Source: Selaginella moellendorffii (Eukaryota; Plantae; Lycopodiophyta). Taken from it: a stretch of DNA of 64,000 nucleotides. The translations under genes and the position numbers were made by a program. The stretch lies in NCBI RefSeq assembly GCF_000143415.4, contig NW_003314373.1:186001-250000 (forward strand), in the 5' to 3' direction. Positions 27,120 to 60,543 of the stretch are shown piece by piece. The notes under the pieces are model-generated. The model saw only the letters and a program-made list of their open reading frames with translations, did no database searches and was not told where the DNA came from. Each line of letters starts with the position of its first letter. Positions within the stretch are counted from its first letter, which is position 1.

Positions 27120-28324
27120 TTTCTCTCGAATCGAAACCGATGGATTCACGCGAGCGAGATGCGAGCTAATCCAATCGCCCAATCAATCCCGCTTGGCAAA
27201 ATGCGAGAGAGAGAGAGAGAGAGAATCCTTCCTCCAGTGGAAGAGCCACACACACACGCACACAAGCACACACACTCGAGATATCTATTATCTATATTTC
27301 GGAGAATCGCGTATAGCCCTGGAAACACGAAGCTGACGAGCTCTTGAGCCCCGACTCACACGACAAACAAAAGCGCGAGAGAGAAAAAAAAAATTCCTTT
27401 TTTCCTCTTGTGTGTAAAATAGGGCAACAAAACAAGCCAGAAATATTGTCACGGGGATGACCGGCTGGAACCGGTCACTGGCCTTCCGTACCGGTAAAGA
27501 GACCGGCACTGCCGGTTGGCGAGGAGGGCCGAGCATGCGGCGCACGTGGCGGGGGGCCTCATGTAAATCGCGCTCGCGCTTTTGTCCAATCCCAACCGTT
27601 GAGGATGGATCGGACGGCTGGGGCCGGCCGCTGGCGGCGAATCGCGGCCGTCGAGTTGCCCGCTAAGCACGAGTTTAAGCGGCGGTACTTAAGTACTAAA
27701 GCGCGAGCCCATGTCTTGGGAGCTTTGGAATAAAGGGGAGCTCTTTTCTGTGCCTTATTTTTTTTGCCTTGCGTCCCAGCGATCGATCGTCGGGGGGACT
27801 CGTGCGAGCAAGCAACGTGCTGTGCGCGAAAGAGCAAAAAAAAAAAAAAACCAAAAAAAGGTGAGTGGATTCAACATTGGAAGAAGCGAATTTAGTACTC
27901 TACTTCCAAATGCGCGTGTATGTGTGTGTGTGTGTCTCTCCTGGCACAAACTATCAATCCAAGTTGTCTATAGATTAGGGCTTAGGGTTTTGAAGTTAGG
28001 ATTTAGGGTATAAGAGCCCTATCCCATAAGCCCAAGAGAAACTAAAACCTCCAACATATAATGTCCTTGAGGGAATTGTTGCCTTTGGTGGAGAAAGCAG
28101 CGCTTCGGTCCATTAGGGCTGAGTGAAAGTCCCCGAGCTCGGTGCTTTTGACACCAAATGGCAGAGAGTGCCACCTCGAAAGAGGAGAAGCCCGGTTGAG
28201 GCCACTGTGGTGTCTCGCCATGGCCGGGTTAGCTGGCTATAGTCCCAGTAATGCGCTTACACACGCGTGTACAACAGAACGGGGCTTACTATCTCCACCA
28301 AATCTTTTTTACGATTGTGTTCTA

Positions 28325-32284: not shown

Positions 32285-35200
32285 TCAGGCAGCCACGAAC
32301 GTATTACACAACGACACGTGTGTGGCGGCCCGCTCCTCCGCCTCCATCGCCCTCGAGATCCTGGCCGCACGTTCCACGTCACCGTGCGTGTTGCAAGCGC
32401 CAACCAGCGCCGACCACGTGGCCTCGTCGGGCTTGAACGGCATGCTCACGATCAAGTCCTCGGCGTCCGCCAGCCTCCCAGCTCGGCCCAAAAGATCCAC
32501 CACGCAGCAGTAGTGATCGGCCCCAGCTTCCAGATCATAGTCTCCGCGCATGCTCGCGAAGTAGTCCCACCCCCGGCGGAAGAACCCGGCGTGGTTGCAA
32601 GCGAAGAGCACGGCCAGGAACGCCACCTCGTCGGGCTCCATCCCCTGGAGCTGCATCTCCTGGAAGAGATCGATGGCTTCCAGGCTCGACCCGTGCGAGG
32701 CATACGCCACCATCATCGACGTCCACGACACCACGTCGCGCTTGTCCAGGCGATCGAACACCCGCCGGGCCTCGCCAACTTTGCCGGATCTCGTCAGCGT
32801 GTTGAGCAGCGCGGTGCCGACGAGGGAGTCCGTCTCCATGCCGGTGGAGAGGATGGCGTGCTGCACGGCGCTGGCCTCGCTCGGGGAGAAGCTGCCGCCG
32901 ACTGCTAGAAGTCCCAGGAAAGTTGCTCGATCCGGCCTCACCGATGCGGCTTGCATCGCCTGGAACAGCTCCAGCACCGCCTCCTTGTCGCCTCGCCTCG
33001 AGTAAGCTGCGATCATGGCGTTCCAAGCCGGAGATCCCCGTGACTTCTCCTCCATGGCGTCGAACACCCGCCTCGCCACCTCCACACTGCCACATTTGCC
33101 GTGCATGGCGATGAGCGACGACTGGATGGCCGAGTCCGAGCACCACCCCAGGTCCGAAAGCCGGCTGTGGATCTTCGCCGCCATCTTCACGTCCTCGATG
33201 CCCCTGCTTGCCTCCATCACCGCGACGTAGACGATCTTGTCAGCACGGCAGCCCTCCTGTTCCATCTTCTGGAACACCTCCACGGCTTCTCTCGCAAAAC
33301 CGTTCGTCGAGTATCCCCGTATCATGGACGTCCAAGTGACCGCGTTTTTGCTCGGCATCACGTCGAACACCTGCTTGGCTTCCACCACGTCGCCGCACCT
33401 CCCATACATGGTAACCAGCGCAGTGCCAACGTAGACGTCGATGTGGATCCGGTTGGCGAGGATCAAACCGTGCAGAGTTTTGCCATGGACGAGGCCGTCA
33501 CTCCCCATGGCCGAGCAGGCGTCGAGAGCACTCACGTAGCTCACTCGGTCTTGCCTGGGACCGCAAGCCTCTTGCATCTCGAAGAAGAGGCCCAAGGCTT
33601 CCTTCGGCTGATCGTTGTGGAGATGAGCTCTAATGATGGAATTCCACGAGACCACGTCCCTGTCTTGCTCTTGCATGCTGTGGAACACGGCTTTGGCTTC
33701 CTCCAGACACCCGCACATCCCGTATAAGTCGAGCAGAGTGTTGTTCACCACCGTGTCTATCTCAAACTTGCCTTCCACTATCCTTGCGTGGATTCGCTTG
33801 CCTTCTTCGAGGTTCATGGCGCTCGAGCACGCGTCAAGAACGCTCGCGAATATCACCTTGTCGGGAACCACGTCGATCTGCTTGTAGAGCTCGATGGCTT
33901 CGTTTCCGAAACCGTTCTGTCCGTATGCAGTGATCATCCTGGCCCAGGTGAGAGCAACTCTCCTACTCATTCCATCGAACAATCTCCTGGCCTCGATCAC
34001 CTCTCCAAACTTCCCATACATTTTGATCAGTCCTGTCTGTAACGCTACGTCGGACATGAAGCCAATACTCTGGATTCGTCTGTGAATCTCTCTGCCTTTT
34101 TTCAGGCCTCTGTCGGGGCACGACAATCCGCAGCAACCGTCGAGAGCGCTGATCAGCGTGTACTTGTCAGGAGGAATCCCCACCAGAGCCATCTCGTGAA
34201 ACACCTCCACTGCCTCCTCTCCAAAACCATTCCTGGCGTAAGTTGCAATCATCGTGTTCCACGACACGGAGTCCCTGACCGTCATCCCGTCGAAAACGTT
34301 TCTGGCATCAGCTGGACTCGAGCATTTGCTGTACATGTTGATGAGTGCATTCCCCAGGACAAGATCGGAGCCGAAACCATGCCTTGTGACACTCGCATGA
34401 ACGTCCCGGCCATCTGACAGAGCTTTCAGGCTCACGCAAGCGTCGAGAGCATATAAAAAGCTGACCTTGTCCGGTTCAGTCATCTCGTAAAACAACCGAA
34501 GAGCTTCTGTCGGACACCCGTTCTGGTTGTAAGCTGCCATTATGACATTCCACGAGACGACATTCTTCTCCGGTATGGTATCGAAGGCGAGTTTGGCATC
34601 CGCCAAGCTGCTGCTCTTCCCAAACATGTTGACAAGCGAGGCAGCCACTGCGACGTCGGAGCCGAGTCCACTCGAAACAACTCGAGCATAAGCCAGCCTC
34701 GACTCGGCCAGGCACCCCAGGCCCGTGCAAGCTTCGACCAGACTCAGGAATGTGATCCTGTCCGCTTTCATGCCTTCCAGATCCATCGCCTTCATCAGTC
34801 GGAGAGCATCCTTGGCCAGTCCATTCCGAGCATAGGCTCCTATCACAGTGTTCCAGGACACGACGGTCTTCTCAGGCAAGCCTTCGAAAACCATCCTGGC
34901 CGTCTGGCAGTCCCCGCACCTCCCATACATGCCCACAAGCGCGTTTCCCACGTTGAGATTTGCATGCCACCCGCTCTCCACAATCCTCGAGTGTGCCTGC
35001 TTGGCTCTGTTCAAGTCGAACAGCTTCGAACAGGCATCCACGACTGCCAAGTACGTCACCTTCTCGGCCTTAAACCCCTCCAAGTCCATCTCCTGGACGA
35101 GCCTGAGTACTGCTCTCCCGTGGCCACCCTTGCTGTAGGCCGTAAGCAAGATGGTCCACGAGTAGATGTTCTTTGCCTGGATGGCCTGGAAGGCAGCACG

Positions 35201-35509
35201 GGCACTCTCCATATCCCCGCATTTCCCATACATGTCCACGAGCAGATTACCGAGAAACGCATGACTGCCGTATCCACACTTGAGAATCTGCTCGTGGACA
35301 AGCCTGCCATCTTCTAGTGACCTCTCCTCTGCGCACACACGCAGAAGCCCAACGAATCCTTCCGGATCTCCCTGAAGACCAACCTGAACTAGCTCGCTCT
35401 CCGTCACCGACGACGATCCTTTCTGCTGTGGACAACTCCTGCTCATCCATCTCTTGAGTCTGACGAGCACCACCACATTCCTTCTTGGTCGAGAAGGAGC
35501 CCTAGCCAT
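32285..35509 (-). CDS. Long PLS-class PPR protein ending within the E domain (no DYW)
   Basis: 1074-aa intronless ORF of PLS repeats. E1 motif MPFKPDEATWSALVGAC, stop after THVSLCNTFVAA. Confidence 0.93.
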   Translation of the reverse strand: MARAPSRPRRNVVVLVRLKRWMSRSCPQQKGSSSVTESELVQVGLQGDPEGFVGLLRVCAEERSLEDGRLVHEQILKCGYGSHAFLGNLLVDMYGKCGDMESARAAFQAIQAKNIYSWTILLTAYSKGGHGRAVLRLVQEMDLEGFKAEKVTYLAVVDACSKLFDLNRAKQAHSRIVESGWHANLNVGNALVGMYGRCGDCQTARMVFEGLPEKTVVSWNTVIGAYARNGLAKDALRLMKAMDLEGMKADRITFLSLVEACTGLGCLAESRLAYARVVSSGLGSDVAVAASLVNMFGKSSSLADAKLAFDTIPEKNVVSWNVIMAAYNQNGCPTEALRLFYEMTEPDKVSFLYALDACVSLKALSDGRDVHASVTRHGFGSDLVLGNALINMYSKCSSPADARNVFDGMTVRDSVSWNTMIATYARNGFGEEAVEVFHEMALVGIPPDKYTLISALDGCCGLSCPDRGLKKGREIHRRIQSIGFMSDVALQTGLIKMYGKFGEVIEARRLFDGMSRRVALTWARMITAYGQNGFGNEAIELYKQIDVVPDKVIFASVLDACSSAMNLEEGKRIHARIVEGKFEIDTVVNNTLLDLYGMCGCLEEAKAVFHSMQEQDRDVVSWNSIIRAHLHNDQPKEALGLFFEMQEACGPRQDRVSYVSALDACSAMGSDGLVHGKTLHGLILANRIHIDVYVGTALVTMYGRCGDVVEAKQVFDVMPSKNAVTWTSMIRGYSTNGFAREAVEVFQKMEQEGCRADKIVYVAVMEASRGIEDVKMAAKIHSRLSDLGWCSDSAIQSSLIAMHGKCGSVEVARRVFDAMEEKSRGSPAWNAMIAAYSRRGDKEAVLELFQAMQAASVRPDRATFLGLLAVGGSFSPSEASAVQHAILSTGMETDSLVGTALLNTLTRSGKVGEARRVFDRLDKRDVVSWTSMMVAYASHGSSLEAIDLFQEMQLQGMEPDEVAFLAVLFACNHAGFFRRGWDYFASMRGDYDLEAGADHYCCVVDLLGRAGRLADAEDLIVSMPFKPDEATWSALVGACNTHGDVERAARISRAMEAEERAATHVSLCNTFVAA

Positions 35510-45859: not shown

Positions 45860-48400
45860 ATGGAACAACGCTCTGATCGCAGGACACAAGAGACAATATA
45901 CTTAGGGCCCATTCTGTTCATTCAAGGAGGGGGCGACGACGGAGACATCAAAGCGGTACAAGAATCTGGAGGTGGTAATACGGCTGAGATGATGCTGTCA
46001 TCTTCTCTAGATTCAGCCGGTTACAAACGAGCAACGGCGAGCTCTTCTTGAAGGTGGACGTGGGAAACACTACAGTCGACACGACTAGAAACAAAGCTGC
46101 GGACTCACTCCCAACTTTTCCTTTCTGCAAAGTGACAAGCTCATTCCGGTTGGATTGATCGATGGCAGGCGCGTAGACAATGGCATGCCCTAAGCCCACA
46201 CTGGAAAGGTGGTGGACCGGATCCTTTGTTGACTTGTAAGATGTCCTCTCGTGATAGAGCCATGTTATGTTAGAAAAGAACAATGTCCATCACGGGCTGA
46301 CAAAAGTAAGTTGCGTGCCAAATCCAAATATTCCGCATGGATGATTGATCATCCTCTCCCCACTAAAATCTTCGTCACTTTGTGTCAATCTCCAGGGTCT
46401 TCCAATCTCGCAAGGACGGGACTGATTGGGATCCAAATGACGAAGTTCAATCAGCTGAATGATTATTTTTCTACTGGACTAGACAAAGGAGGGATCCAAG
46501 TTACGGGGTTCTTCAAAGTTCTGGAAGGCGACGAGCTATATGACGTCCATTTGATCACGACAGCAAAAGAAAGAGGGGAAAAGCGCCCAAATGGAGGTCC
46601 ATTTACGCCCTTCTTAGTTGACCCTACACAAAATCCAAGCAAACGATTAGGCGATGCACCCTCTTGATGTTGTTGCTTTGCTCTTGTCTCTCTGGGGGAT
46701 CTATCATTATTCGAGCCGAAATCTTTTGCGCAATTTGGAGTGGTGGCTTTGGTTTCGGAAAAAGATTGAGGGGTGCAAGGGGGACAAACCATTTGGAACA
46801 AGCGCCAGATAGATGCCGGATTTGAAATTCCAAAGATTCTCCCCACAAGCCCTAAAACAGGGGAAGATTCCAGCGTAATCATTTTTTCATGGATCGTGGT
46901 CGGTTGGCTCACATTTTAATCTCTGGCTGGCTTGTAGTTCATCCTTGTTGGAATGACATGGTGTTTTGTGTCTCATCACTAGGGAATCTTTCTCGTTGAA
47001 TGCACTGCCATGTTGGCGAATCATGTGTTCATCACTAGCACTTCGATCTCTATCTACAGACGCTTTCCTAAATTTCTTAAGAAGAAAAGAAAAGTCATAT
47101 CTAGTATATTTTATTTTTTATGCTGTTTCAATGGCTTAGAGTTTTTGTTTTAACTTTAATCGTTGTGATTTAATCTTCCGTTCCTGTGAATACCAAGGCG
47201 CCTCAAAGAACTATAAGGTCTCGGTCTCTTGTGCCATTGGCGGGTCAAGCTCGTCAAGAACCGAGAGGCTCTCGGTACCAGCCGTCTAGAGCTGCATCTT
47301 GCACTCCCATGCGACGGTCTAGTCCCCGAGCGCGCGATCGCTCTCTCTTTCGGAGCTTGCGGGTTCGCAAGGTTTATACCATGGTATAGAACTAGGCGAC
47401 CAATGTCTCTGCAGTTTAGTTGCATCCTCCCCGGCGCTGGAAACACTGAAAGTCACGGAATTTGGAGATGTCTCACATTATACGCTTGTGATGCTGTCGT
47501 GCAGATCCCAGGTGACCCAGGGCGAGGTTTTCGGGTAGCAAGAGACAAGAGGCGCGAGAGACTGGAGGAATTACGATTTCCTGAGCTGGAAGTCAGCCAC
47601 AAGTTTTGTCTCAGCTCTCCATCTTGAGAGATCTGCATTTTCATGCATTAGTAAGTTCGTTTTGCATAACTGTGTGCTTTCGCAGCAGGGCTTATCCGAT
47701 CACATGGACAGCAGATTTGATGCGCACTGTACAAGATATTGCTCGGTTTATCGGAGTCTTAACTACAAGGTGATGGTCGAGACAGAGTTCATACAGCCAC
47801 TACGAGAGGTGACATGTGTTGTTCGACTTGATGCTGTCCTATCCTGATGGCATCTGGTATATGCTAGTGATTTCTTGCTTTGTTTTCTGTTTTCTGTTGT
47901 ATATCTGCAATAAAAAATATATTAATACGAAGCCATGACTGGAGCTAAACTCGAGCTTAGATCTATTCTTCCTAGTTTAGCTTGATGAACTTTTGGAAGA
48001 TTGTGGGGAATGTTTGCTCGAAAGCGAGTTAAAGCCAGAATGATGGCTTTTTCTATTCTGCACCTCCAGAGACAAGCCCGGATCACGAACTTTGGTTGTT
48101 CTATCAGAACCTAGCAACACTCTCAACGTTGTCTACTGTCGAGGCCTCATTAGGCACCTGTACGCAGGCTTCACTGCTAAAGCCTCGAATGTATCAAAGC
48201 TTTTCGAGCTAGCTACGACTTGTTGCATGCATATCCCTCTATGGAGGGAGTTTGCCCATTGACTTCTAAGAATTGATTCGAGGTACTTCGACTCAAGTTC
48301 TGGCCAGAGTCCATCGCATTCTCGAAAAAGACAAAGAAGTTCTATCTATCTTCGACGTGTAAGGTAGAGAAAGGTAGTCGCTTGAGTTTACTTCGTTTAT
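45860..48400 (+). pseudogene. Unassigned degenerate coding-like remnants
   Basis: Short open stretches bounded by GT/AG-like sites and interrupted by stops (e.g. 46251-46917, 47500-47810, 48070-48270). No family recognised. Confidence 0.25.
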
Positions 48401-49257
48401 ATTTTCCGAGTGACTTGGAACACATTTTACCCAATTATTCTGTCACTTACGTTTCCCCGAATGTAACGTGACGACAGTGCATTCTGCAGGATTCCCAGGC
48501 TTGTATAGGAGCTTTTATAGTCCAGCAAAGGGAGAGAGAGAGAGGCATGACTTTCATATCCTGTTACCCAACCAAGCCGACTGTGAGTTTTAGGGGAACA
48601 CACTCCCAACATTGTGGTCCATAGCTCCTATACCGATCTAAGGCATATAATATAATAGTTATAGAAAAATGAGATTAACCACATTCATTAAGAAATTAGA
48701 TAAATTTTAGATAAAAAAGAATATCCTATAATATAATTTTTTAAAAGCTTTGCTTAATAGTATTGGATCTTTAAAATATTCTTTGATCAATTAATCTAGT
48801 AAACAATTATTATATGAAAGGTGTAAAAAAACTCTTGACATGAATAAATATTTTGACAAAATAAAAGATAATAACATATTGTTTCATAAAGTAATGATGA
48901 TTTTGTATGGTTATCTCTCATATATTATGATGATAGAATTTAAGATAACCATATCTATTTTATAGGAGAATAGACTTTTATATAATGCACATAAGTACAA
49001 TTGCCTTTATAGCAAAAGTTTTGGATTAAGTTTTGGTGGCCAAAAATATTATATAATTCTTATCAAAAATTATTTTGATTATTTATCCAAGAGTTATATG
49101 TATGAAGAGTGCTCTTTAAAGATCATATTGTAATCATGAGATAAAATACAATTATTTATCTTACTATTACATTTGTTGAAATAAATTGAAACCTTAAAGC
49201 TACTTATATATCTAAAGTATGTGTTTCTCAATTTATGGTGAGAATGAACTTTTGATA

Positions 49258-49722
49258 AACTAGATTTATGTGACAATCCTTTTTGAAATTTACTCATAGA
49301 TGGTAAACATGGTTTATATTAGTGATAACTAAAGAATATTTATGTTAAAAGAAAAATTTAAAAAGAGTAGGTATATTTCTTACTTTATAGGTTTTATAAA
49401 GGAAACTAAAAATTATATAAAAGTTAGTCACAAAATATATTTAATTTAAATGAATCTAGATATCCAATATAAAATAGTAATATTATTCTACAACTAGATT
49501 CATATGACAATCCTTTTGAAATTTACTCATGGATGGTAAACATGGTTTATATAATAATTACTAAAGAATATTTATGTTAACAGAAAAATTTAAAAGGAGT
49601 AAGTATATTTGTTACTTTATAAGTTTTCTAAAGCAAACTAAAAATTATATAAGAGTTAGTTACAAAACTAAATTTAATTTATAAATATTTAGATATCTAA
49701 TATAAATTAGTAGTATTATTCT
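49258..49722. repeat. Diverged ~235-bp tandem duplication inside a very AT-rich block (48630-49800)
   Basis: AACTAGATT.AT.TGACAATCCTTTT(T)GAAATTTACTCAT.GATGGTAAACATGGTTTATAT... occurs at ~49258 and ~49492, and the two units are colinear to their ends. Confidence 0.85.
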
Positions 49723-50649
49723 TTAATAAAGAATCCTCATAGAATCTAAAAAAAAATCACTTTCATAAATATGCATATAAAAAATATTTATAAAAATGGT
49801 AGCTTAAGTACTGTGAGGTCCAAGTGTACAACTACGATGCTATATACTAATATTAACGTAGTAGGATTTTGGTAACTGTTGGATTGATTTTAATCCGGAC
49901 CACTCACTTTTGTATATAAGCTAGAGTTTTTGCGCTAATTGATATACACATTGCCTTTTCCATATTCCAAGCACTCACATTGGTAGAAGTGAGAGGCACC
50001 TTTCATTGTCCCTGAGGAGTGCTTGGATTTGGGATTTTAATTTAGATTTAGCTTTTTCCATTTCCATTTTTTGATTTTTCCTTTCAGATATTTAGTTTTT
50101 CTATTGTTTAAATCTCCCTTTCCTCCTAATGTTTTCTCATTTTCCTTCTTTTGCTTTTTTTCCTTTCTATTCATCTTCATGGCAAAGTAGTAGTCTTTGT
50201 GAGACACAAAATCCCTAGGCCCCAAAGTGGAGCCGGAAAGGGTGCCACATGGTAGTGGCCGAAGCGAAAGCCAAACGAGCGTAACACGTTTGGACTAAAA
50301 ACTCCGACTTGGAAGGTCAAGTGGGAGTGGAACTCCCAACAAAGTGCTTGAGGAGCGAGCACGAGGCAACCAACAAGCAAGGCTCCAAAAAAGGACCCAA
50401 AAAGGACCAACACATGACACGTGGAAATGTCTGAGATGGAGTCCGAGATGGACCCGAAATGGAATCCGAGACGGAGTCCAAGATGGACCTGAAGTGGAGT
50501 CCGAAATGGAGTCTGAGATGGACCCGAGATGGACCCAAGATAGAGTCCGAGATGGAGTGTAAGGAACCAACTCGCCGAGGTGTCGTAGGCTAAGGGAACC
50601 CCGAAAGCATGACCAAAATGACAAAGAGTTCATCGGATGGGACCAAGTC

Positions 50650-50920
50650 AAAGATCGAGTCCAAGACCGACTCTAGGACCGAGTTCGAGATAGAGTCCGG
50701 AATCGAGTCCAAGACCGACTCGGGGACCGAGTTCGAGTCCGAGTTCGAGACCGAGTTCGAGACGGAGTCCGAGATCCGAAATCGGGTCTGAGACCGAGTC
50801 CGAAGTCGAGTCCGAGGTTGGGCCCGAGATCGGGTCCGAGATCGAGTCCGCGATCGAGTCCGAGACCGAATCCGAAGTCGGATCCGAAATCGGATCCGAG
50901 ATCGAGCCAGAGACTAAGTC
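50650..50920 (+). repeat. GAGTCC/GAGACC/GAGATC hexamer array within the LTRs (also 57035-57290, 50435-50557, 58076-58160)
   Basis: Direct reading; the LTRs differ by one 12-nt unit here. Confidence 0.9.
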
Positions 50921-51765
50921 CAAATACTAATACGGGTCAAGGGGTGAAAGCCCAAAGCGTGCGTCCCCCAGGGGGGGGGGGCTGCAGGGGGTTCCAAAAG
51001 TATAGTAGGGATAGTGAGGTCCAGGAACCAGTTTAGAAGGGACTCTCCAGTGGGGCTCCCAAACTGACTTGAGGTTGGGACTGGGACCGAGGGGCCTTGG
51101 GTGGGAGTGAGCATGGACTTGGTTGGTGCCGGAGGGGCCATCCAAGGAAGTGCTCAAGAGCAGCTCCCACTCCCGAAAGGGAAACCGATTGCGGTGCTCC
51201 CGGCTCATGTGGAGTGGTGCCCCACTTGAGTACCATGTGGCTCATTGGTCCTCGCCCTTCCTAGGGGCTTGGGCCTTCCTTCGGGATGGAAGTGGGGGGC
51301 GAGAGGTACCCATGCCGGGCCGTTAGGCCACGGTGTTTCGCCCCGGCGTCCCGAAGCAAGTGTTGCACTCAAGACTTGGGATTTAGAGGGTCCCATGATC
51401 AAGTCTTGTGGTACCAAGGGATGTTAGGAACCTGGAAGCTTGGTGTGCTTGGCTGCTTGTGCTTGCGGGGAGTGTAGCCGAACCTTAAGTCCAGTCTAAC
51501 CCGGGGAGGGGGATTGGGAGTGATTTGGGGAATCCGTGGAAGGATGGCTAACGCTCCATTGCTCGTGCAGTGAGTAGCTGAAACCAAGTAGGAGCTGGTA
51601 CCATAGGCGAGAACCTTGGCAAGGGAACTTAGCAAAAGCCAAGGCAGTGTTGGACGGATAGACGAGGTAAGCTGGCAAATTGGAAAGGAAAAATTTGTGG
51701 CTTACAATTTGGTATCGGAGCCTTTATCTCAGTTCTAGCGAAGGATAGAGGCGGATTGCTGGGAG

Positions 51766-54700
51766 ATGGCAAGGGCAGGGCGTAAGCGAACCCAGGCGGA
51801 GACGGAACCTCCGCCGGAGCTGGAGCCTCTGGTTGAACAAGAGGCTATGGATGAGGAATCCTTGCATGAGGGGGACTCCAGTGAGGAAACTTCCAAACAG
51901 GAGTCCGGTGGCGAGGTTCGGTCGTCCAAGGCTCGATTGGACGTGCTAGAAGGACAGTTGGCACAGACCAATGCCCTGCTGGAGACTCTCGTACGCGAGT
52001 TAAAGCGTGACGAGAAGCGGAAGAAAAAGCGAAAGACTGCGGATGCTGGCAGCGCAGAAGGTGCGGACCCTTCGGCAGGGACTGAGGCAAAACCAGACAA
52101 GGTCGAACAGACCGAAGTGGAATCAGTCCCTCAGGCAGTTCCCAAGTACAAACCAAAGCCCCCACCGGTGTTCAAGGGAGTGAACGACTATAAGGTTGTG
52201 GAGGATTGGTTTTACGATATGGAGGACTACTTCCGAGCATTGCGGTTACCGAGCTCGGAGAAGGTCCCATGTGCAAAACCATACTTGGCAGATAATGCCA
52301 AGTCTTGGTGGAGAACAACGGAGGCCAACGAAGGACCGGTGGCCACCTGGGACATGATGAAGGCGAGGATCCGCGCGACATACGTTCCTCCGAATGCCAC
52401 TCTGCATCTGAGAGATGAGTTGAGTAGGCTGAAGCAAACTGGAACCATCCAGGAATATGTGAATGGGTTCATGGCAAAGAGGATACTTGTCACGGACATG
52501 GGGGATATGGATGCGTTCCATGCCTTTATATCAGGTTTGCAAACCTGGGCTCGCGGTGAGGTGATGCGCTGGAACCCGACCAACTACAAGGAAGCGTTGG
52601 ATGCGGCCATCAAGGTGCATTTCAACGATAACCTGCGAAAGGGGAACACGACGGGGTCGGGATCCACGTTTCACAAAGGGGCCAAACCGAGGGGAACATA
52701 TAGCAAGGGGAAATTCAAGAAGAGTTTCTCTAAGAATGAGTCCTCGGGGTTCCGGAAAGGCAAAGCCGGTGGCCAGCGAGCGAGTACGTGGGGAAGTCAA
52801 GCGAAAAAAGACAAACCCACGGATAAGAAGGTCAAGTCGTATAGCAGCGTGGGCAACAACGTATGCTATAACTGCGGCGAAGCGGGACACTTCTCGAGGG
52901 AATGTCCCTACCCGAAGAAGGCCAGAGCCAATATGGCCATCAAGTCGGGTGAAGTCCAAACTGAGGTATGTGATCCAGTCCCTAACTCAAAGTTACTCAT
53001 TACACGAGCAACTTTGGTAGAGAGTCGTTCGCGACATCTACTAGCCCTCCGAGGGAAGCTCGGAGGTAGCTTTGTTAAGATCCTTATTGACACGGGTGCT
53101 TCGGATAATTTTGTGGCTGCAGACATAGTCCGGCAAGCCGGACTAACGGTGCAGCGGCTAGGCGAACCAAGGACTATAGAGTTTGTTCAAGGTAGCCAAA
53201 GCACCGATGAGGTACTTCGACAAGCGAGAGTCGAAGTGGGGACATGGAAAGTGGACATGGATTTCACCGTCTTGGACATGGCGGGATTTGACGTGATCTT
53301 CGGAATGGATTGGTTTAATCGGTTCGTGGTAGCCCTACATGGACAAGGTAGGAACCTTGTGGTATTGGCGAATGCCCAAGGAAGAAGATCTAGGGTGGAA
53401 GCCCAGGATCTAAAGGTAGGGCAAAGCAAGGCCAAAGAGTCATGCTTAAACCTGGTGTCCACGAGAGGACAACTCACTAAAGGAACTAAGGCAGCCTTTT
53501 TGTGCTTACTCTCGGTGAAGAGTGACAAAAAGACAAGAACGGAAGAAGTACCTTTAGTGATCCAGCAGGTGCTGGACCAATTCCAGGATACGATGCCGGA
53601 GGAGCTACCGGCGGGGTTGCCCCCCGCACGACCGATAGAACATAAGATTGAGCTGGTCGAGGGTGCTGAGGCGGTGGTTCGTCCACCCTATCGATTGAAC
53701 GAAAAAGAACTCAAGGAGCTCAAGAGCCAACTAGAGGAGTTGGTGGACAAAGGGTATGTTAGGTTGAGCAAGTCGCCGTATGGGGCGCCGGTGCTATTTG
53801 TGAAAAAGAAAGATGGATCTATGCGCATGTGCATAGACTACCGGTTGCTCAACAAGTATACCAAGAAGAACAAGTACCCTTTGCCAAGGATCGAGGACCT
53901 GTTCGATAGGTTGGGAAAGGCAAAATACTTCTCGAGGATTGACCTAAGGTCAGGATACTACCAGATCAGGGTAGCTGAGGAAGATGTCGAGAAGACAACC
54001 TGTCGAACGAGGTATGGGAGCTTTGAGTTTTTGGTGATGCCCTTTGGGCTGTGCAATGCGCCGGCAACGTTTTCGGCGTTGATGAACCACATCTTTGTAC
54101 CCTATCTGGATCGCTTCGTGGTCGTCTATATTGACGACATCCTGATCTATAGCGAGACGCTAGAGGAGCATGCCGAACACTTGGCGAAGGTGTTTGAGAA
54201 ACTAAGGGAACACAAACTGTATGCTAAAGAGAGCAAATGTGACTTTGCTCAACAAGAGGTAAAGTTTCTCGGGCATGTGGTGGGCCAGGACGGGCTCAAG
54301 GTGGACCCGGAGAAGGTCCAAGCGATCCAGGAATGGGAACGACCATCGAATGTACATGAGTTGAGGGCGTTCCTGGGGCTATGCAACTACTATCGAAAGT
54401 TTATCAGACACTATTCGAGAGTAGCCCTGCCCTTAACGGACCAAACAGGAAAAGGGAAGATGGTATGGACAACGGAATGCGAGGCAGCATTCGTCCACCT
54501 CAAAGGGAAGTTGAGGAAGGCTTCGGTGTTGGCCTTACCAGACTTTGGTAAAGACTTTGAGGTAGACACGGATGCTTCGGACTTTGCGTTGGGCGCGGTT
54601 TTGAAGCAAGACAACCATCCAGTAGCGTTCTTCTCGAAGAAGCTGGACAAGGCTCAACGGAAGTGGCCTGCCCACGAGAAGGAATTGTTTGCGGTGGTCA

Positions 54701-56537
54701 AGGCGCTCAAGGAGTGGCGACACTACCTTGGGAGACACTTCAAGGTTTACACGGACAATGTGGCAACGAAACACTTCTTGTCACAGCCCGACCTAAGGGG
54801 AAAACAAGGTCGGTGGGCCAATGCCTTGGCCGAGTTTGATTGCGAGATCCTGTACAAGCCTGGGAAGAGCAACATCCTGGCAGATGCGCTCAGTCGAAAA
54901 GCGAGCTTGAAGTTGGCGATATCTAGCGCGACAGCAACCTTTTGGGACGATGTGCGGACCGCATACGAGAGTGATGGTCTAGCACGAGAAGTGTTGCTGA
55001 GGAATCTGGAGGCGCGGGAAGCTCACCAGAGAGGTGAGCTGCCAACGGAAGAGAAAACGGGCTATGCGGAACGCAACGGACTCATATATTACAAGTAAAC
55101 GAGGGTGTATGTTCCAGAAGGGGAACTAAGGAAGGTAGCCTTGGAAGAGTGTCATGACGGACCTCTTGCGGGACACGGCGGAGTGCCCAAGACGATGGGC
55201 TTACTCAAAAGGAAGTATCACTGGCCAGATATGGCTAAGGATGTCCAAGACTATGTAAGACATGTCCAACATGTCAGCAGGTCAAAGCCGTGACGAAGGC
55301 TAGTGGGGGCTTGTTGCAAAGCATCCCCATTCCAGATCGTCCGTGGAAATGTCTCACGATGGACTTCATCACGGGACTACCCCCAAGCGAGGGGTTCGAT
55401 GCGATATTTGTGGTGGTGGACCGATTTTCAAAGATGGCACATTTCATACCCACCACAACGGATGTGGATGCGGAAGGTGTGGCGAAGCTGTTCTTCGAAC
55501 AAGTGGTTCGAGTGCGGGGAAGGCCGGAAGAGATTATCTCAGATCGAGATAAGATCTTCACCAGTAGGTTCTGGAGGACACTCCTAGAACAGTATCGCAC
55601 CAAGTTGAAATTCAGCACGGCCTATCACCCACAGACAGGTAATGGGTATTGAGTCAAGATTGATGGCACTAACACTTCTTGACAGACGGACAAACGGAAA
55701 GGGTGAATAGACAGCTGGAGGATTATTTGCGATGCTATGTCTCGGGAGACCAGACCGACTGGGTAAGTCATTTGGGACTTGCGGAAATGTGTTATAACAA
55801 CTCACCACATTCGAGCATCGGGGTGAGTCCATGGGAAGTCATCAATGGGCGAGCTATTGAAGGTCCTGTGGAACTCGGCGTGGCCGAGTATCATGGAGAG
55901 TTACCCGCAGTGGAGGCATTCACAGCGGAAAGACTCAACATTTGGAATCTAGTGAGGGATTCCTTGGAACGGGCTCAACAAAGGCAAACTAAGTACGCGA
56001 ACCAAAAGCGTCGAGATGTGGAGTTCCAAGCTGGGGAGAAGGTGTGGCTGAACACCAAGAACCTCAGGCTACCAAGTGGGATCAGCCGGAAGTTGACCCA
56101 AAGGTAAAAATGCATGTATTCCTGTAAATGAATTGATCTTGAGTTCCTTAAGCAGGTTCGCGGGGCCTTACGAGATTGAGGCTCGAATCGGTAAAGTGGC
56201 TTACCGTCTCCGACTTCCTCGAGAGATGGGGAAGATGCACCCCGTGTTCCACGTGAACTTACTCAAGCCGTATTTTGAGGATCCGCTTCGCAAGGACCAA
56301 GTAAGACCTTTACCTGAGGTTATCCAAGGGGAGGAGGAATACGAAGTCGAGGCCATCCTCAATGCGCGCAAGAGCAAGCGACAAGGACGCGAGGTGAGAG
56401 AGTTCCATGTGAAGTGGAAAGGATTTCCACACTGCGAAGCAACATGGGAACCGGAGGAGAACCTAGCGAACGTGCGAGATCTAGTGGAGGAATTTCTGCA
56501 TGGCAGAACTCTATGTACTTATGCAAAGTTCAATTAA
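51766..56537 (+). CDS. Gag-Pol polyprotein (Gag, CCHC knuckle, protease, RT, RNase H, integrase, chromodomain), interrupted by predicted introns; this copy also has a stop and a frameshift
   Basis: [62 protein letters not shown]|GQTER, R|FAGPY, chromodomain YEVEAIL...[19 protein letters not shown] at 55096-55098; 1-nt deletion ~55258. Confidence 0.95.
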
Positions 56538-58080
56538 AAGTATCAATTTGAGAAGTTGAGCAATGGCATATGTTGGGACCCGAAGGCGCGCCGAAGGTGA
56601 GCTAATTAGCATGGGTTAGCTAGGTCAACCAGGCGTAGGGAGCTACGCCCGACTCCCTGCGGGGATGTCGAATCCGTAGACGTATTCTACGGAGGTTGGG
56701 TTTGAGTCCCAACCCCCTAGTAAAGCAAGGCTGGGTTCAAGTCCCGACCCCATACTAGGGCGTGGTGAGGGGTGGAGTATAGGGACACCTATATTCCGTT
56801 GTCATGAGCTCTTGGCCGGGGAGGCTAACTTAGGCACACCGCTAAGTGGGGGGATGCCCCCGGAGACATGGTCAACAAGTCGTAGGATAAAAAAGAGACG
56901 TTCGATGTGGGCATCGAACTTCTTCTATGGGTGGTGGAGTTGTAAGGAACCAACTCGCCGAGGTGTCGTAGGCTAAGGGAACCCCGAAAGCATGACCAAA
57001 ATGACAAAGAGTTCATCGGATGGGACCAAGTCAAAGATCGAGTCCAAGACCGACTCTAGGACCGAGTTCGAGATAGAGTCCGGAATCGAGTCCAAGACCG
57101 ACTCGGGGACCGAGTTCGAGTCCGAGTTCGAGACGGAGTCCGAGATCCGAAATCGGGTCTGAGACCGAGTCCGAAGTCGAGTCCGAGGTCGGGCCCGAGA
57201 TCGGGTCCGAGATCGAGTCCGCGATCGAGTCCGAGACCGAATCCGAAGTCGGATCCGAAATCGGATCCGAGATCGAGCCAGAGACTAAGTCCAAATACTA
57301 ATACGGGTCAAGGGGTGAAAGCCCAAAGCGTGCGTCCCCCAGGGGGGGGGGCTGCAGGGGGTTCCAAAAGTATAGTAGGGATAGTGAGGTCCAGGAACCA
57401 GTTTAGAAGGGACTCTCCAGTGGGGCTCCCAAACTGACTTGAGGTTGGGACTGGGACCGAGGGGCCTTGGGTGGGAGTGAGCATGGACTTGGTTGGTGCC
57501 GGAGGGGCCATCCAAGGAAGTGCTCAAGAGCAGCTCCCACTCCCGAAAGGGAAACCGATTGCGGTGCTCCCGGCTCATGTGGAGTGGTGCCCCACTTGAG
57601 TACCATGCGGCTCATTGGTCCTCGCCCTTCCTAGGGGCTTGGGCCTTCCTTCGGGATGGAAGTGGGGGGCGAGAGGTACCCATGCCGGGCCGTTAGGCCA
57701 CGGTGTTTCGCCCCGGCGTCCCGAAGCAAGTGTTGCACTCAAGACTTGGGATTTAGAGGGTCCCATGATCAAGTCTTGTGGTACCAAGGGATGTTAGGAA
57801 CCTGGAAGCTTGGTGTGCTTGGCTGCTTGTGCTTGCGGGGAGTGTAGCCGAACCTTAAGTCCAGTCTAACCCGGGGAGGGGGATTGGGAGTGATTTGGGA
57901 ATCCGTGGAAGGATGGCTAACGCTCCATTGCTCGTGCAGTGAGTAGCTGAAACCAAGTAGGAGCTGGTACCATAGGCGAGAACCTTGGCAAGGGAACTTA
58001 GCAAAAGCCAAGGCAATGTTGGACGGATAGACGAGGTAAGCTGGCAAATTGGAAAGGAAAAATTTGTGGCTTACATGGAG

Positions 58081-58116
<36 letters not shown>

Positions 58117-60543
58117 TCCGAGTCCGAGTCCGAAATCGGGACCGAGACCGAATCCGAGTCCAAATATTAATACAGGCAGTTGGGTGAAAACCCAAAGCAA
58201 TCCCCCCGGGGGGGGGGGGGGGGGGGGTGGCAGGGGTTTCCAAAAAGCCTAATAAGGAAAATGTGGGGGTTTGGAGCCTAGTGGAGCCAGTTTGGCCAGG
58301 AAAGGCCAGTTTGGCCTAAAAAGGCCATGCCCAGTGTTGGGTGATGAATTGACTACTAAGAAGTCCAAGACTAGAGTGAATACGGACCGACAAACGGGGT
58401 AGCTTGGCGAAGTGTTCAAAAGCTGGCTCTAGTTCCCCCGGAAGATTGACTGGCTGATGCTCTCAGTCCAAGTGTGGGTGGCACTACCTACTTGGATACC
58501 TCGCGTGGCTCAACGGAACCTTGCTCTAAGCCCATGGCTAGAGCACCCAAAGGCGGAAGGCGGGGAGAGTACCCATGAGGCCCGCGTAGGGCCACGGTGT
58601 TCCGAAATGTTGTCCCAAAGGCCTAGATTGTGGAAAGGAAGAGGAGTAGCCCTCTGGTGTGGTGACCAAGGATACAGTCAGGTGGTGAGGAAGTCCCAAA
58701 GGACCGTGGGACTTAGTGGTCGGGCCTGTGGGCCTCAATCCAGTGGTAGTGTTGGCGAACATGGCTATGGGTAGAAAGGGACTTGGTGGGGAATGGAAAA
58801 AGGATATTGGGGAAGGCTCTTCCCCATGTCTGTGGGCATCCTATGGATGCTAAGGAGTGGATCTAGGATGATCACTCATGGATGGATGGCCCAGTCTTTG
58901 ATAGACGGGACCGTGATGTAGGTGGTGTCAAACCACCAGGTGACCAAGGTGAATGGGCATAGCCTTAGCATAACGGGCTGATGTGTCGGTGGTACCTTGA
59001 GGTGTTGGTTGTGGGATCAGACACGTGGAGCACTTAAACCAAGTGCAATGGTTGAGTGGCATGGATGCCATTCTTGGGGCTAGCAAGTCCCTAAGTCCAA
59101 AATGGGACTTACGGAGGTTGTGAGTGAGACTCCTCCAAGTGGTCGGAGGTGTGGTTAAGTGACTAAACTAAAATGGAAAATTTAGTCGCTTACAGTCTTC
59201 TCCTCTAACTCTAGAGCAGCAATTAGTGCAATTGCTTGATGCTATGCGATTGCAATTGAACAATCAAACTCAATTGATGGCGGCATTCACGGCATGTGAT
59301 ATAGCTCCTCCTGCTCTTGGTGCCAATCCTCGCGTTTGGTTAGAGTTCTTTCATGGGAATCCTAGGAATGATGTGTACTATTGGTTCGATCACTTCACAG
59401 TGATTGCCACCTATCATTCTTGGGATGATGCTTGACGTTTACGTGAGTTTCCCACATGGCACTGCAATGGTACAATGGTTTGAGTGTAGCCACTCATGGG
59501 GACTAGAGTGTTCTCTTCAAATGCATATTTGGACATGTTAACGATTGTGATGATACCTTCCAACAATTGTATCATCTTTGTTAAGAGCCATCTAAGTCGC
59601 TGATACAAGTTTCCAAAACCTTTTATTTTGTGTAGAGCTAAATTTGTCAAAACGGATCAAGTTAGGAATGTTATGGCCAACACTTTGTCAAGATTTTGTC
59701 GGACTTGTGTATGCACTTGCTCCAACCACCCGTGACAATGCTTTTCGTTTGGCACAATGTTATAAGACATCACTTCTTCAACTTTTTGCTACACGTCCTT
59801 CCACTCCACTTCTTGTGGGCGATGGTCCTATTCTAATGGAAGTTGATGCTGCTGCTACTCAAGTCCAAGGACAAGGGCGAGGTTGTGGTCATGGCCGAGC
59901 ATAGCGCAAATCTTCATTTCTGGCACACTCCCTCACCAGCCCTGCCTATGGTGTTGCTCACGCACTGCGCAGAAGTGAGTTGATCCTGAAAGGAGCCTGG
60001 ATTGTATGCCCGACTACCATTCTACTTGCCCTTGTTATCCTTGTGAGCACCTCCTCTAGGAGCTTACAAACGCACAGACTCTCACGGGAATGCCCACACA
60101 ACCACATCTGAGCAGAGCAGCAATGGAGCCGTGCATGGCATAACACCTATCGCCACACCCTCTTTCCTTCCCGGCCACACATGCATCTTACCCATTGGCC
60201 GCCACAACATTAAGTTGATATTCCCACTAACCATGGCCACCAGCCCTGGCCCGGGCCTGGGGTGGCCTCCCCTTCCCAAGAACCATGGCTTCCAAAGCTG
60301 CCCCAAGCCTAGGATCGGACGGCTGGATCCTATTGGGCCCTTCGTTCTTATTATTATAGATAAATAGATAGATATTTACACTTGTGATGTTGTGTGTGGA
60401 CACGCACATCCAGCTGACGCACCACATTGTAATCTTACACGTTTAAAACACGAGCGGCCAGCTGGAAATACAGAGCTGCATGAGTAAATGTGCGCCTGGA
60501 TCAAGTTTCGCATTACTACGATCTATAGCAAGAAGAGTGTAGT

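What the first reader, a model, noticed from the sequence alone, without database searches (positions are those of the whole stretch)
55639..55685. 47-nt intron splits the integrase catalytic core, flanked by a GACAG direct repeat
Removing GTAATG...CACTAAC...TTCTTGACAG exactly restores the conserved HPQTDGQTER motif carrying the catalytic Glu of D,D35E. Retention gives TGNGY* and a dead integrase. The same GACAG precedes the GT and ends the intron, a signature expected from intron gain by target duplication or repair.
Basis: partly seen in the sequence, partly recalled or inferred. Interest (0 to 1): 0.88.

Follow-up and report, generated by a model that had tools for sequence, protein, structure and literature searches.

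The report
Two tiny introns in retrotransposon integrase
A young but already damaged jumping gene (a chromovirus-type LTR retrotransposon) in the spikemoss Selaginella moellendorffii carries two host-style mini-introns (47 and 52 bases) inside its integrase gene. This is unusual because such elements copy themselves through RNA and should lose introns, but only this one copy could be examined.

Summary
Positions 55639-55685 are a 47-nt GT...AG segment. Taking it out restores AYHPQT-D-GQTER and the 35-residue spacing of the integrase D,D35E triad. The two flanking pieces abut, one residue apart, in ten intact relatives and in the solved Ty3 polyprotein.

- A second mini-intron of 52 nt (56104-56155) lies between the integrase core and its SH3/chromodomain tail.
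- An in-frame stop lies at 55096-55098.
- A 1-nt frameshift lies near 55255. This copy is therefore dead whether or not it is spliced.

The host is Selaginella moellendorffii. Six introns of a neighbouring host gene are 50-74 nt, AT-rich and GT-AG, and one also carries CACTAAC. The GACAG repeat is not a usable signature: three of its five bases are splice consensus, and a host intron shows an equally long repeat.

The element's LTRs differ at only 3-6 sites. The introns were therefore most likely inherited through an unspliced genomic RNA, and integrase would have been made only from spliced mRNA, as in Ogre elements.

No other copy of the family and no transcript could be reached, so splicing and family-wide presence remain untested. 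I rate it a new variant of a known kind, of moderate interest.

The parts
50553..51706 (+). 5' LTR (1154 nt, TG...CA), with an internal array of 12-nt tandem repeats
   Evidence: Direct repeat with 56935-58075. Ends read. Only 3-6 substitutions and 4 indel runs between the two LTRs.
51709..51720 (+). Primer binding site TGGTATCGGAGC, 2 nt after the LTR
   Evidence: Sequence read. The resemblance to the initiator tRNA-Met PBS (TGGTATCAGAGC) of plant LTR elements comes from my own knowledge and was not tested.
51766..55098 (+). Single gag-PR-RT-RNaseH open reading frame (1110 aa) ending at an in-frame TAA (55096-55098)
   Evidence: ORF list. Pfam hits to Retrotrans_gag, zf-CCHC, RVP_2, RVT_1 and RT_RNaseH. 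The stop interrupts YYK*TRVYVP in the same frame.
55099..55254 (+). Integrase HHCC zinc-binding domain, cut off downstream by a 1-nt frameshift between DYV and KTCPTCQQ (about 55254-55257)
   Evidence: Pfam Integrase_H2C2, E = 9e-15. Three-frame translation. Relatives show one residue missing between the two pieces.
55257..55638 (+). Integrase core exon carrying both catalytic Asp (D at 55362-55364 and D at 55542-55544). It ends in ...AYHPQT plus the first base of the split codon.
   Evidence: Pfam rve, E = 1.5e-12. Aligns to Ty3 Gag-Pol 7Q5B residues 1140-1267. Coordinates.
55639..55685 (+). Candidate intron 1: 47 nt, phase 1, GTAATG...CACTAAC...GACAG, GC 0.40. In-frame stop at the fifth codon if retained.
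55686..56103 (+). Middle integrase exon: last two bases of the split codon, then GQTERVN... (catalytic Glu at 55697-55699) to ...KLTQ plus two bases of a split codon
   Evidence: Aligns to Ty3 7Q5B residues 1269-1389. Colinear with relatives. Coordinates.
56104..56155 (+). Retention puts a stop (AGG TAA) right at the donor.
   Evidence: Leaving it out joins KLTQ-(split codon)-FAGPYEI, with no gap against P0116, P0124, P0244, P0200 and P0210.
56156..56537 (+). Last integrase exon: SH3-like (GPY/F) module and C-terminal chromodomain (about 56340-56495), with the stop at 56535-56537
   Evidence: Pfam SH3_Tf2-1 (2.5e-15), Integrase_p58_C and Chromo (2.6e-16).
56935..58075 (+). 3' LTR (1141 nt)

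Best explanation
The two segments are genuine spliceosomal introns of the short Selaginella type. They sit in the integrase gene of a chromovirus (a Ty3/gypsy LTR retrotransposon with a chromodomain). They are insertions relative to all relatives compared.

Inferred history: the copy has nearly identical LTRs, so the introns were most likely already in the parent element. They were carried into this copy because the RNA that was packaged and reverse-transcribed was unspliced.

Inferred mechanism in an intact element:
- Unspliced RNA would serve as the genome. It would be translated into Gag-PR-RT-RNaseH plus an integrase stump that stops before the catalytic Glu.
- Only mRNA spliced at both introns would give full integrase with its chromodomain tail.
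- Integrase supply would thus depend on partial splicing, much as Ogre elements depend on partial splicing to join their two ORFs.

The donors are non-optimal (GTAATG and GTAAAA, no G at +5) and U content is low for this host. Both features would fit inefficient splicing.

This particular copy is in any case inactive, because of a stop codon and a frameshift upstream.

Shown: the anatomy, the colinearity, the resemblance to host introns, and the young age. Inferred: splicing, inheritance through unspliced RNA, and any regulatory role.
For: - GT...AG ends at the only placement that restores the frame, for two separate ORF breaks.
- Exactly one residue (the split codon) is missing at junction 1 in all ten relatives, and at junction 2 in the five relatives whose alignments reach that junction. 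The same holds at junction 1 against Ty3 7Q5B.
- D-35-E spacing is restored.
- Both sites are proto-splice sites: CAG|A and AAG|G.
- The introns are AT-rich (GC 0.40 and 0.33) against exons at 0.51.
- Six introns of the host ASL gene in the same window are 50-74 nt with GC 0.30-0.42. Their donors are GTAAGT, GTAGAT, GTAACG and GTAGCG, and one has the same CACTAAC.
- The host is S. moellendorffii. [quoted passage not shown]
- The three relatives checked at DNA level are uninterrupted ORFs.
- The LTRs differ by only 3-6 substitutions in 1140 nt. Two roughly 50-nt inserts with full splice signals are unlikely to have arisen after insertion.
- Partial splicing as an expression strategy has a precedent in Ogre (PMC6317226; PMC12786077).
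Against: - Only one copy was seen. No other member of the family exists in any searchable protein or DNA collection, so family-wide presence is untested.
- There is no RNA evidence of splicing.
- The copy is already broken elsewhere. It may belong to a non-autonomous lineage in which the inserts have no function.
- At 47 nt, intron 1 is below the smallest host intron measured here (50 nt). Both introns are less U-rich than the host introns (0.30 and 0.35 against 0.35-0.51).
- Splice-like signals alone are common in shuffled sequence.
- There is no matching target-site duplication. The two LTRs could come from different copies by recombination, which would weaken the age argument.
Confidence: 0.55

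Rival explanations
1. The inserts are real introns in sequence terms but a dead end. They were gained once, either in a non-autonomous sublineage or in this very copy (after integration, or during its last round of reverse transcription). They have no role in the element's expression. Integrase, if needed, was supplied in trans by intronless relatives.
For: The copy carries a stop and a frameshift as well. No intron-bearing relative was found. Retroelements normally lose introns each cycle (PMC8557442; PMC12786077).
Against: It needs two independent inserts of about 50 nt in a 900-nt stretch. Each lies on a proto-splice site and each has complete splice signals. With only 3-6 LTR substitutions, there was little time for this. 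Random indels seen between the LTRs are 1 nt or one 12-nt repeat unit, not 50 nt.
Confidence: 0.25
2. The inserts were made at the DNA level by a mobile 'introner'-like element or by staggered double-strand-break repair. This would leave short direct repeats: GACAG at intron 1 and AGGT at intron 2. It is the first reader's reading.
For: There is a 5-nt repeat at intron 1. A 4-nt AGGT straddles both junctions of intron 2. Introners are documented as a source of new introns in other lineages (PMC12130899, listed).
Against: The repeats consist mostly of splice consensus. The six host introns show repeats of 0-5 nt, one of them 5 nt and one 4 nt. The two introns are unrelated to each other and to everything else in the 64-kb window, and have no terminal inverted repeats. 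No introner family is known to me in Selaginella; this is my own knowledge and was not tested.
Confidence: 0.08
3. They are not introns. They are two chance insertions, or assembly errors, in a decaying pseudogene that happen to begin with GT and end with AG.
For: The copy is decaying. GT...YAG segments with low GC are frequent in shuffles.
Against: An insert must start with GT and end with AG exactly where the frame and colinearity are restored. Allowing for the 5-6 equivalent placements, that is about 2% per insert and about 5e-4 for both (my own estimate). In addition there are GTAA donors, YAG acceptors, a CTAAC branch motif, AT-richness, and host-typical length.
Confidence: 0.07

Closest known systems
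Ogre elements of legumes (Ty3/gypsy, Tat/Ogre lineage)
   Same: An LTR retrotransposon whose polyprotein reading frame is interrupted by a spliceosomal intron. The intron is removed from only part of the transcripts, so the full polyprotein comes from spliced RNA while unspliced RNA persists (PMC6317226; PMC12786077).
   Different: Ogre is a non-chromovirus. [quoted passage not shown] Its splicing is shown by experiment. Here there are two introns of about 50 nt inside the integrase of a chromovirus, and splicing is untested.
Ty1/copia splicing for a subgenomic gag RNA (EVADE, BARE, Drosophila copia)
   Same: The full-length genomic RNA retains an intron, and a spliced isoform changes which proteins are made (PMC5580714; PMC3735527, listed).
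   Different: There the unspliced RNA encodes the full Gag-Pol, and splicing makes a gag-only message. Here the unspliced RNA cannot encode integrase, and splicing would be needed to complete Pol.
Penelope-like elements
   Same: Retroelements that keep introns through retrotransposition. PMC8557442 describes this as highly unusual among retroelements and infers an intron in a Selaginella PLE.
   Different: A different class, with a GIY-YIG endonuclease, target-primed reverse transcription and no LTRs. Their introns lie mostly in the 5' UTR.
Ty3 integrase (PDB 7Q5B) and plant or algal chromovirus polyproteins (P0116, P0121, P0244, P0200 and others)
   Same: The same domain order, HHCC, D,D35E core, SH3-like module and chromodomain, colinear residue by residue across both junctions.
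   Different: The three relatives checked at DNA level (P0001, P0244, P0200) are uninterrupted ORFs. Identity is only 39-54% in the core and middle integrase pieces, with the HHCC and C-terminal pieces lower in some relatives, and 55-61% in RT-RNaseH. This fits the 'unclassified' S. moellendorffii chromoviruses noted in PMC6317226.
Introners and DSB-repair intron gains
   Same: New short introns at proto-splice sites, sometimes flanked by short direct repeats (PMC12130899, listed; the Daphnia repair-associated gains are recalled from my own knowledge).
   Different: There is no repeated family, no inverted ends, and no repeat beyond what host introns show.

Membership tests
Spliceosomal (U2-type GT-AG) intron | GT at the 5' end and AG at the 3' end, at the placement that restores the reading frame | tested here: met
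   Both segments: GTAATG...ACAG and GTAAAA...GCAG.
Spliceosomal (U2-type GT-AG) intron | Removal gives a product colinear with uninterrupted homologs | tested here: met
   One residue (the split codon) is missing at junction 1 in all 10 relatives and at junction 2 in the five whose alignments reach it. Ty3 7Q5B shows the same at junction 1. D-35-E spacing is restored.
Spliceosomal (U2-type GT-AG) intron | Length, base composition and branch-point motif typical of the host's own introns | tested here: met
   Host ASL introns are 50-74 nt with GC 0.30-0.42, and one has CACTAAC. The TE introns are 47 and 52 nt with GC 0.40 and 0.33. Intron 1 has CACTAAC with its branch A 13 nt from the 3' end. 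Intron 2 has only a weaker TTGAT-type motif. U content is at the low end of the host range.
Spliceosomal (U2-type GT-AG) intron | Excision from RNA in vivo | not testable with these tools
   No transcript data are reachable. No protein from this family exists in the collections.
Chromovirus (Ty3/gypsy LTR retrotransposon with a chromodomain) | LTRs, a PBS, gag-PR-RT-RNaseH-IN order, and a chromodomain at the integrase C-terminus | tested here: met
   LTR pair. Pfam domains in order, including Chromo at E = 2.6e-16. A matching target-site duplication was not found.
Retroviral-type integrase (D,D35E) | Two Asp and one Glu, with 35 residues between the second Asp and the Glu | tested here: met
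   Met only if the 47 nt are left out: 31 + 1 + 3 residues. Alignment to Ty3 and PFV integrases.
Ogre-like partial-splicing expression strategy | An intron present in the family's active copies and spliced in only part of the transcripts | not testable with these tools
   Only one copy is available, it is damaged, and there is no RNA data.
Ogre-like partial-splicing expression strategy | [quoted passage not shown] | tested here: not met
   Here gag through RNaseH is one ORF. The introns lie inside the integrase of a chromovirus.
Introner / transposon-derived intron | Many similar copies in the genome, terminal repeats, and a target-site duplication | tested here: inconclusive
   No similarity between the two introns or to anything in the 64-kb window. 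Flanking repeats lie within the host background. The rest of the genome could not be searched.

The most novel reading that the evidence does not exclude
The retrotransposon's own RNA captured host introns by reverse splicing at proto-splice sites (CAG|A and AAG|G). The element's built-in reverse transcription and integration then fixed them in DNA. That would be a natural, datable instance of the long-proposed reverse-splicing route of intron gain, for which retroelement RNAs are the ideal substrate. It would be supported if donor introns with the same 47-nt or 52-nt sequence exist in host genes, and if intron-bearing and intron-free sister copies of the family coexist.
Probability: 0.12. Interest if true: 0.85.

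Novelty: new variant of a known kind. Interest (0 to 1): 0.55.

Why it matters
LTR retrotransposons replicate through RNA, so any efficiently spliced intron should be erased in the next generation of copies. Recent reviews state that plant LTR elements generally lack introns, with Ogre and EVADE as the exceptions (PMC12786077). Retention of introns after retrotransposition is called highly unusual among retroelements (PMC8557442).

Two host-type mini-introns inside the integrase of a chromovirus would mean three things:
- The element packages unspliced RNA.
- Integrase and its chromatin-targeting tail are made only after splicing. This would be a new way for a single-ORF element to set the ratio of structural to enzymatic proteins, or to use splicing to look like a host transcript.
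- The paralogous copies of the family would form a ready-made, dated series for watching intron gain and loss. Recent intron gains in land plants are otherwise very hard to catch.

If instead the inserts are private to this dead copy, the finding is a curiosity.

Tried and rejected
**Looking for other copies of the family**
- Protein search with the 1110-aa gag-pol ORF: best hit 43% identity.
- The same ORF restricted to RT-RNaseH: best 55-61%, all from other plants and algae.
- Exhaustive HMMER search with the 138-aa piece between the introns: at most 50% identity.
- Word-index search with the same piece: nothing.
- Exact look-up of the ORF: not in the collection.
- Metagenome scans by protein and by DNA, and one viral-contig scan: empty.

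No second copy could therefore be examined.

**Sister haplotype**
Locus L004 on GL377589.1 was fetched. It is 97.8% identical over 20 kb but ends about 1.4 kb short of the insertion site. P0065 had no gene on record. Going further would have needed a hand-typed spliced protein, so I left that out.

**Local origin of the introns**
Neither intron resembles the other, the flanking exons or anything else in the window. I therefore rejected tandem duplication of an AGGT-containing exon segment and a local introner copy.

**Splice-signal scan as a statistic**
Rejected as evidence, because shuffled sequence gives more candidates than the real sequence.

**Alternative readings of the upstream defects**
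- I considered whether the TAA at 55096 could be the start of another intron (AAGTAAAC). I rejected this because the conserved RVYVP and HHCC sequence follows in the same frame.
- I considered a programmed frameshift at 55255. There is no slippery heptamer there.

**Further copies in the window**
There is no other chromovirus coding sequence in the window.

**Handling of the broken gene**
The pieces of the interrupted gene were always searched apart.

Full report
**What is there**

It lies on the + strand inside an LTR retrotransposon.
- The LTRs are 50553-51706 and 56935-58075, with TG...CA ends.
- A primer binding site, TGGTATCGGAGC, follows the 5' LTR. It resembles the initiator tRNA-Met site of plant elements; that resemblance is from my own knowledge.
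- One ORF of 1110 aa (51766-55098) carries gag, a zinc knuckle, protease, reverse transcriptase and RNase H.
- Downstream come the integrase HHCC zinc domain (55099-55254), the integrase core (55257-55638), a middle integrase piece (55686-56103), and a last piece with an SH3-like module and a chromodomain (56156-56537).

The element is therefore a chromovirus (Ty3/gypsy). It is the only one in the window.

**Host**

Two host proteins encoded in the window are exact matches to entries of the protein collection on a 557-kb scaffold. Their cluster mates are named proteins of Selaginella moellendorffii on a 1.997-Mb scaffold. That scaffold is the sister haplotype, 97.8% identical over 20 kb. The contig is not human, and the element is not a virus of animals, people or crops.

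**Checking the observation**

- Read through, the frame gives ...[10 protein letters not shown] and a stop.
- With the 47 nt left out, the flanks are ...AYHPQT, a split codon G|AC, then GQTERV.
- In BLASTP against ten intact relatives, the core piece always ends one residue before the next piece begins.
- Against the solved Ty3 Gag-Pol (7Q5B), the core piece ends at residue 1267 (HPQT) and the next begins at 1269 (GQSER).
- The second catalytic Asp and the Glu are then 31+1+3 = 35 residues apart, the D,D35E spacing.
- The 47-mer is unique in the window and has GC 0.40 against 0.51-0.52 in the exons.

1. A second segment of the same kind lies at 56104-56155: 52 nt, GTAAAAATG...TTAAGCAG, GC 0.33. 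Leaving it out joins KLTQ, a split codon AG|G, and FAGPYEI. This is again gap-free against P0116, P0124, P0244, P0200 and P0210. If it is retained, a stop (AGG TAA) follows immediately.
2. The copy has an in-frame TAA at 55096-55098, between RNase H and integrase (YYK*TRVYVP).
3. A one-base frameshift lies between DYV and KTCPTCQQ in the zinc finger, near 55255.

This copy therefore cannot make integrase whatever happens at the introns.

**Are they introns?**

I worked out six introns of the host argininosuccinate lyase gene in the same window from reading-frame continuity.
- They are 70, 74, 62, 60, 50 and 66 nt long, with GC 0.30-0.42.
- Their donors are GTAAGT (three times), GTAGAT, GTAACG and GTAGCG. 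Their acceptors are YAG.
- One contains the same CACTAAC heptamer.
- A survey of intron-length distributions places S. moellendorffii with the fungi, 'sharply different' from the other land plants (PMC6157073).

The two TE segments fit this host pattern in length, ends, AT-richness and, for intron 1, branch motif. Both sit on proto-splice sites (CAG|A and AAG|G). Their donors lack G at +5 and their U content (0.30 and 0.35) is at the low end, which would fit weak splicing.

One caution applies. A scan for such signals alone is not specific, because shuffles of the region give a mean of six hits. What exceeds chance is that two separate ORF breaks coincide exactly with GT...AG-bounded inserts that relatives lack. 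I estimate about 2% per insert and about 5e-4 jointly, allowing for equivalent placements.

**The GACAG repeat**

The repeat is there, but CAG is the consensus at both an exon end and an intron end. One of the six host introns has an equally long repeat (TCCAG), and another has a total of four repeated bases. The second TE intron has only AG and GT, which gives an AGGT at both junctions. The repeat is within background and cannot be read as a target duplication.

**Derived or ancestral?**

- P0001, P0244 and P0200 are uninterrupted ORFs on their contigs.
- The many Logan and ENA hits at 55-61% identity in RT-RNaseH are full-length polyproteins with integrase and chromodomain, though their contigs were not inspected.
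- The nearest relatives of the middle integrase piece are ORFs from Haematococcus and Globisporangium, at 50% identity or less.

The introns are therefore insertions in this lineage. They are unrelated to each other, to the flanking exons, and to anything else in the window. That argues against local duplication and gives no sign of an introner family, as far as 64 kb can show.

**Timing**

The LTRs differ at 3-6 sites in 1140 aligned bases, plus four indel runs of 1 or 12 nt. The copy is young, and a stop plus a frameshift are about what neutral decay would give. Two roughly 50-nt inserts with complete splice signals are unlikely to have arisen after integration. Most likely they were present in the RNA that was reverse-transcribed, so that RNA was unspliced at both sites.

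One weakness remains. I found no matching target-site duplication (CGAGA against TGGAG), and both flanks are 12-nt tandem repeats like those inside the LTR. A recombinant origin of the LTR pair cannot be excluded.

**Most likely mechanism (inferred)**

In an intact member of the family, the unspliced RNA is the genome. It yields Gag-PR-RT-RNaseH plus an integrase stump without the catalytic Glu. Doubly spliced mRNA yields complete integrase with its chromodomain. Partial splicing would thus set the integrase supply.

[quoted passage not shown] Copia-type elements such as EVADE do the reverse: unspliced RNA encodes Gag-Pol and splicing gives a gag-only message (PMC5580714). Retention of introns through retrotransposition is otherwise regarded as highly unusual and typical of Penelope-like elements (PMC8557442).

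**Rivals**

| Explanation | My estimate |
|---|---|
| Introns inherited through unspliced RNA, with splicing-dependent integrase | about 0.55 |
| Functionless gain in a non-autonomous lineage or in this copy | about 0.25 |
| DNA-level insertion by an introner or by break repair | about 0.08 |
| Chance inserts or assembly error | about 0.07 |

**What could not be done**

No second copy of the family and no transcript could be reached.
- All three word-index protein searches, the exhaustive representative search, the exact look-ups and the DNA scans found nothing closer than 61% identity.
- The sister-haplotype locus stops about 1.4 kb short of the insertion site.

**Verdict**

I rate it a new variant of a known kind, namely intron-bearing LTR retrotransposons. 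Interest is moderate. It would rise sharply if a genome-wide survey and RNA data show that the introns are family-wide and partially spliced, or that they match host donor introns.

Noticed in passing
window 56104-56155: A second 52-nt GT...AG mini-intron between the integrase core and its SH3/chromodomain tail, not in the finding. An AGGT tetranucleotide straddles both of its junctions.
   Followed up: yes
window 55096-55098 and about 55254-55257: An in-frame TAA between RNase H and integrase, and a one-base frameshift inside the HHCC zinc finger. The copy is inactive independently of the introns.
   Followed up: yes
window 50420-50552 and 58076-58228 (flanks), 50628-50947 and 57011-57318 (inside the LTRs): Both LTRs contain arrays of 12-nt tandem repeats (GAGTCCGAGAxx type). 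The DNA on both sides of the element consists of similar repeats, 70-76% like the LTR arrays. No matching 5-bp target duplication is seen (CGAGA against TGGAG). This may be a nested insertion into an older related LTR, or a recombinant element.
   Followed up: partly
window 14265-17159, 17292-19490 (+) and 32285-35509 (-): Three long intronless PPR genes, two of them ending in the DYW motif, lie close together. This is typical of the large RNA-editing-factor family of Selaginella.
   Followed up: no
window 48000-50000; L004:1-955: A very AT-rich stretch (GC 0.30) with a 116-nt direct repeat (49320-49435 and 49552-49667, 90% alike) lies just upstream of the element. The sister haplotype is only 86% alike here, or unalignable, whereas the neighbouring 20 kb are 97.8% identical.
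   Followed up: partly
window 26694-27182 (-): The first intron of an R2R3-MYB gene (between KKAG and [12 protein letters not shown]) is read through in frame by a 162-aa ORF. It is about 156 nt long, so host introns are not all of the 50-75 nt class.
   Followed up: no
window 11247-11723 (-): An exon encoding the GGPPCQG motif of a cytosine-5 DNA methyltransferase, part of a multi-exon gene spanning about 9-13 kb.
   Followed up: no
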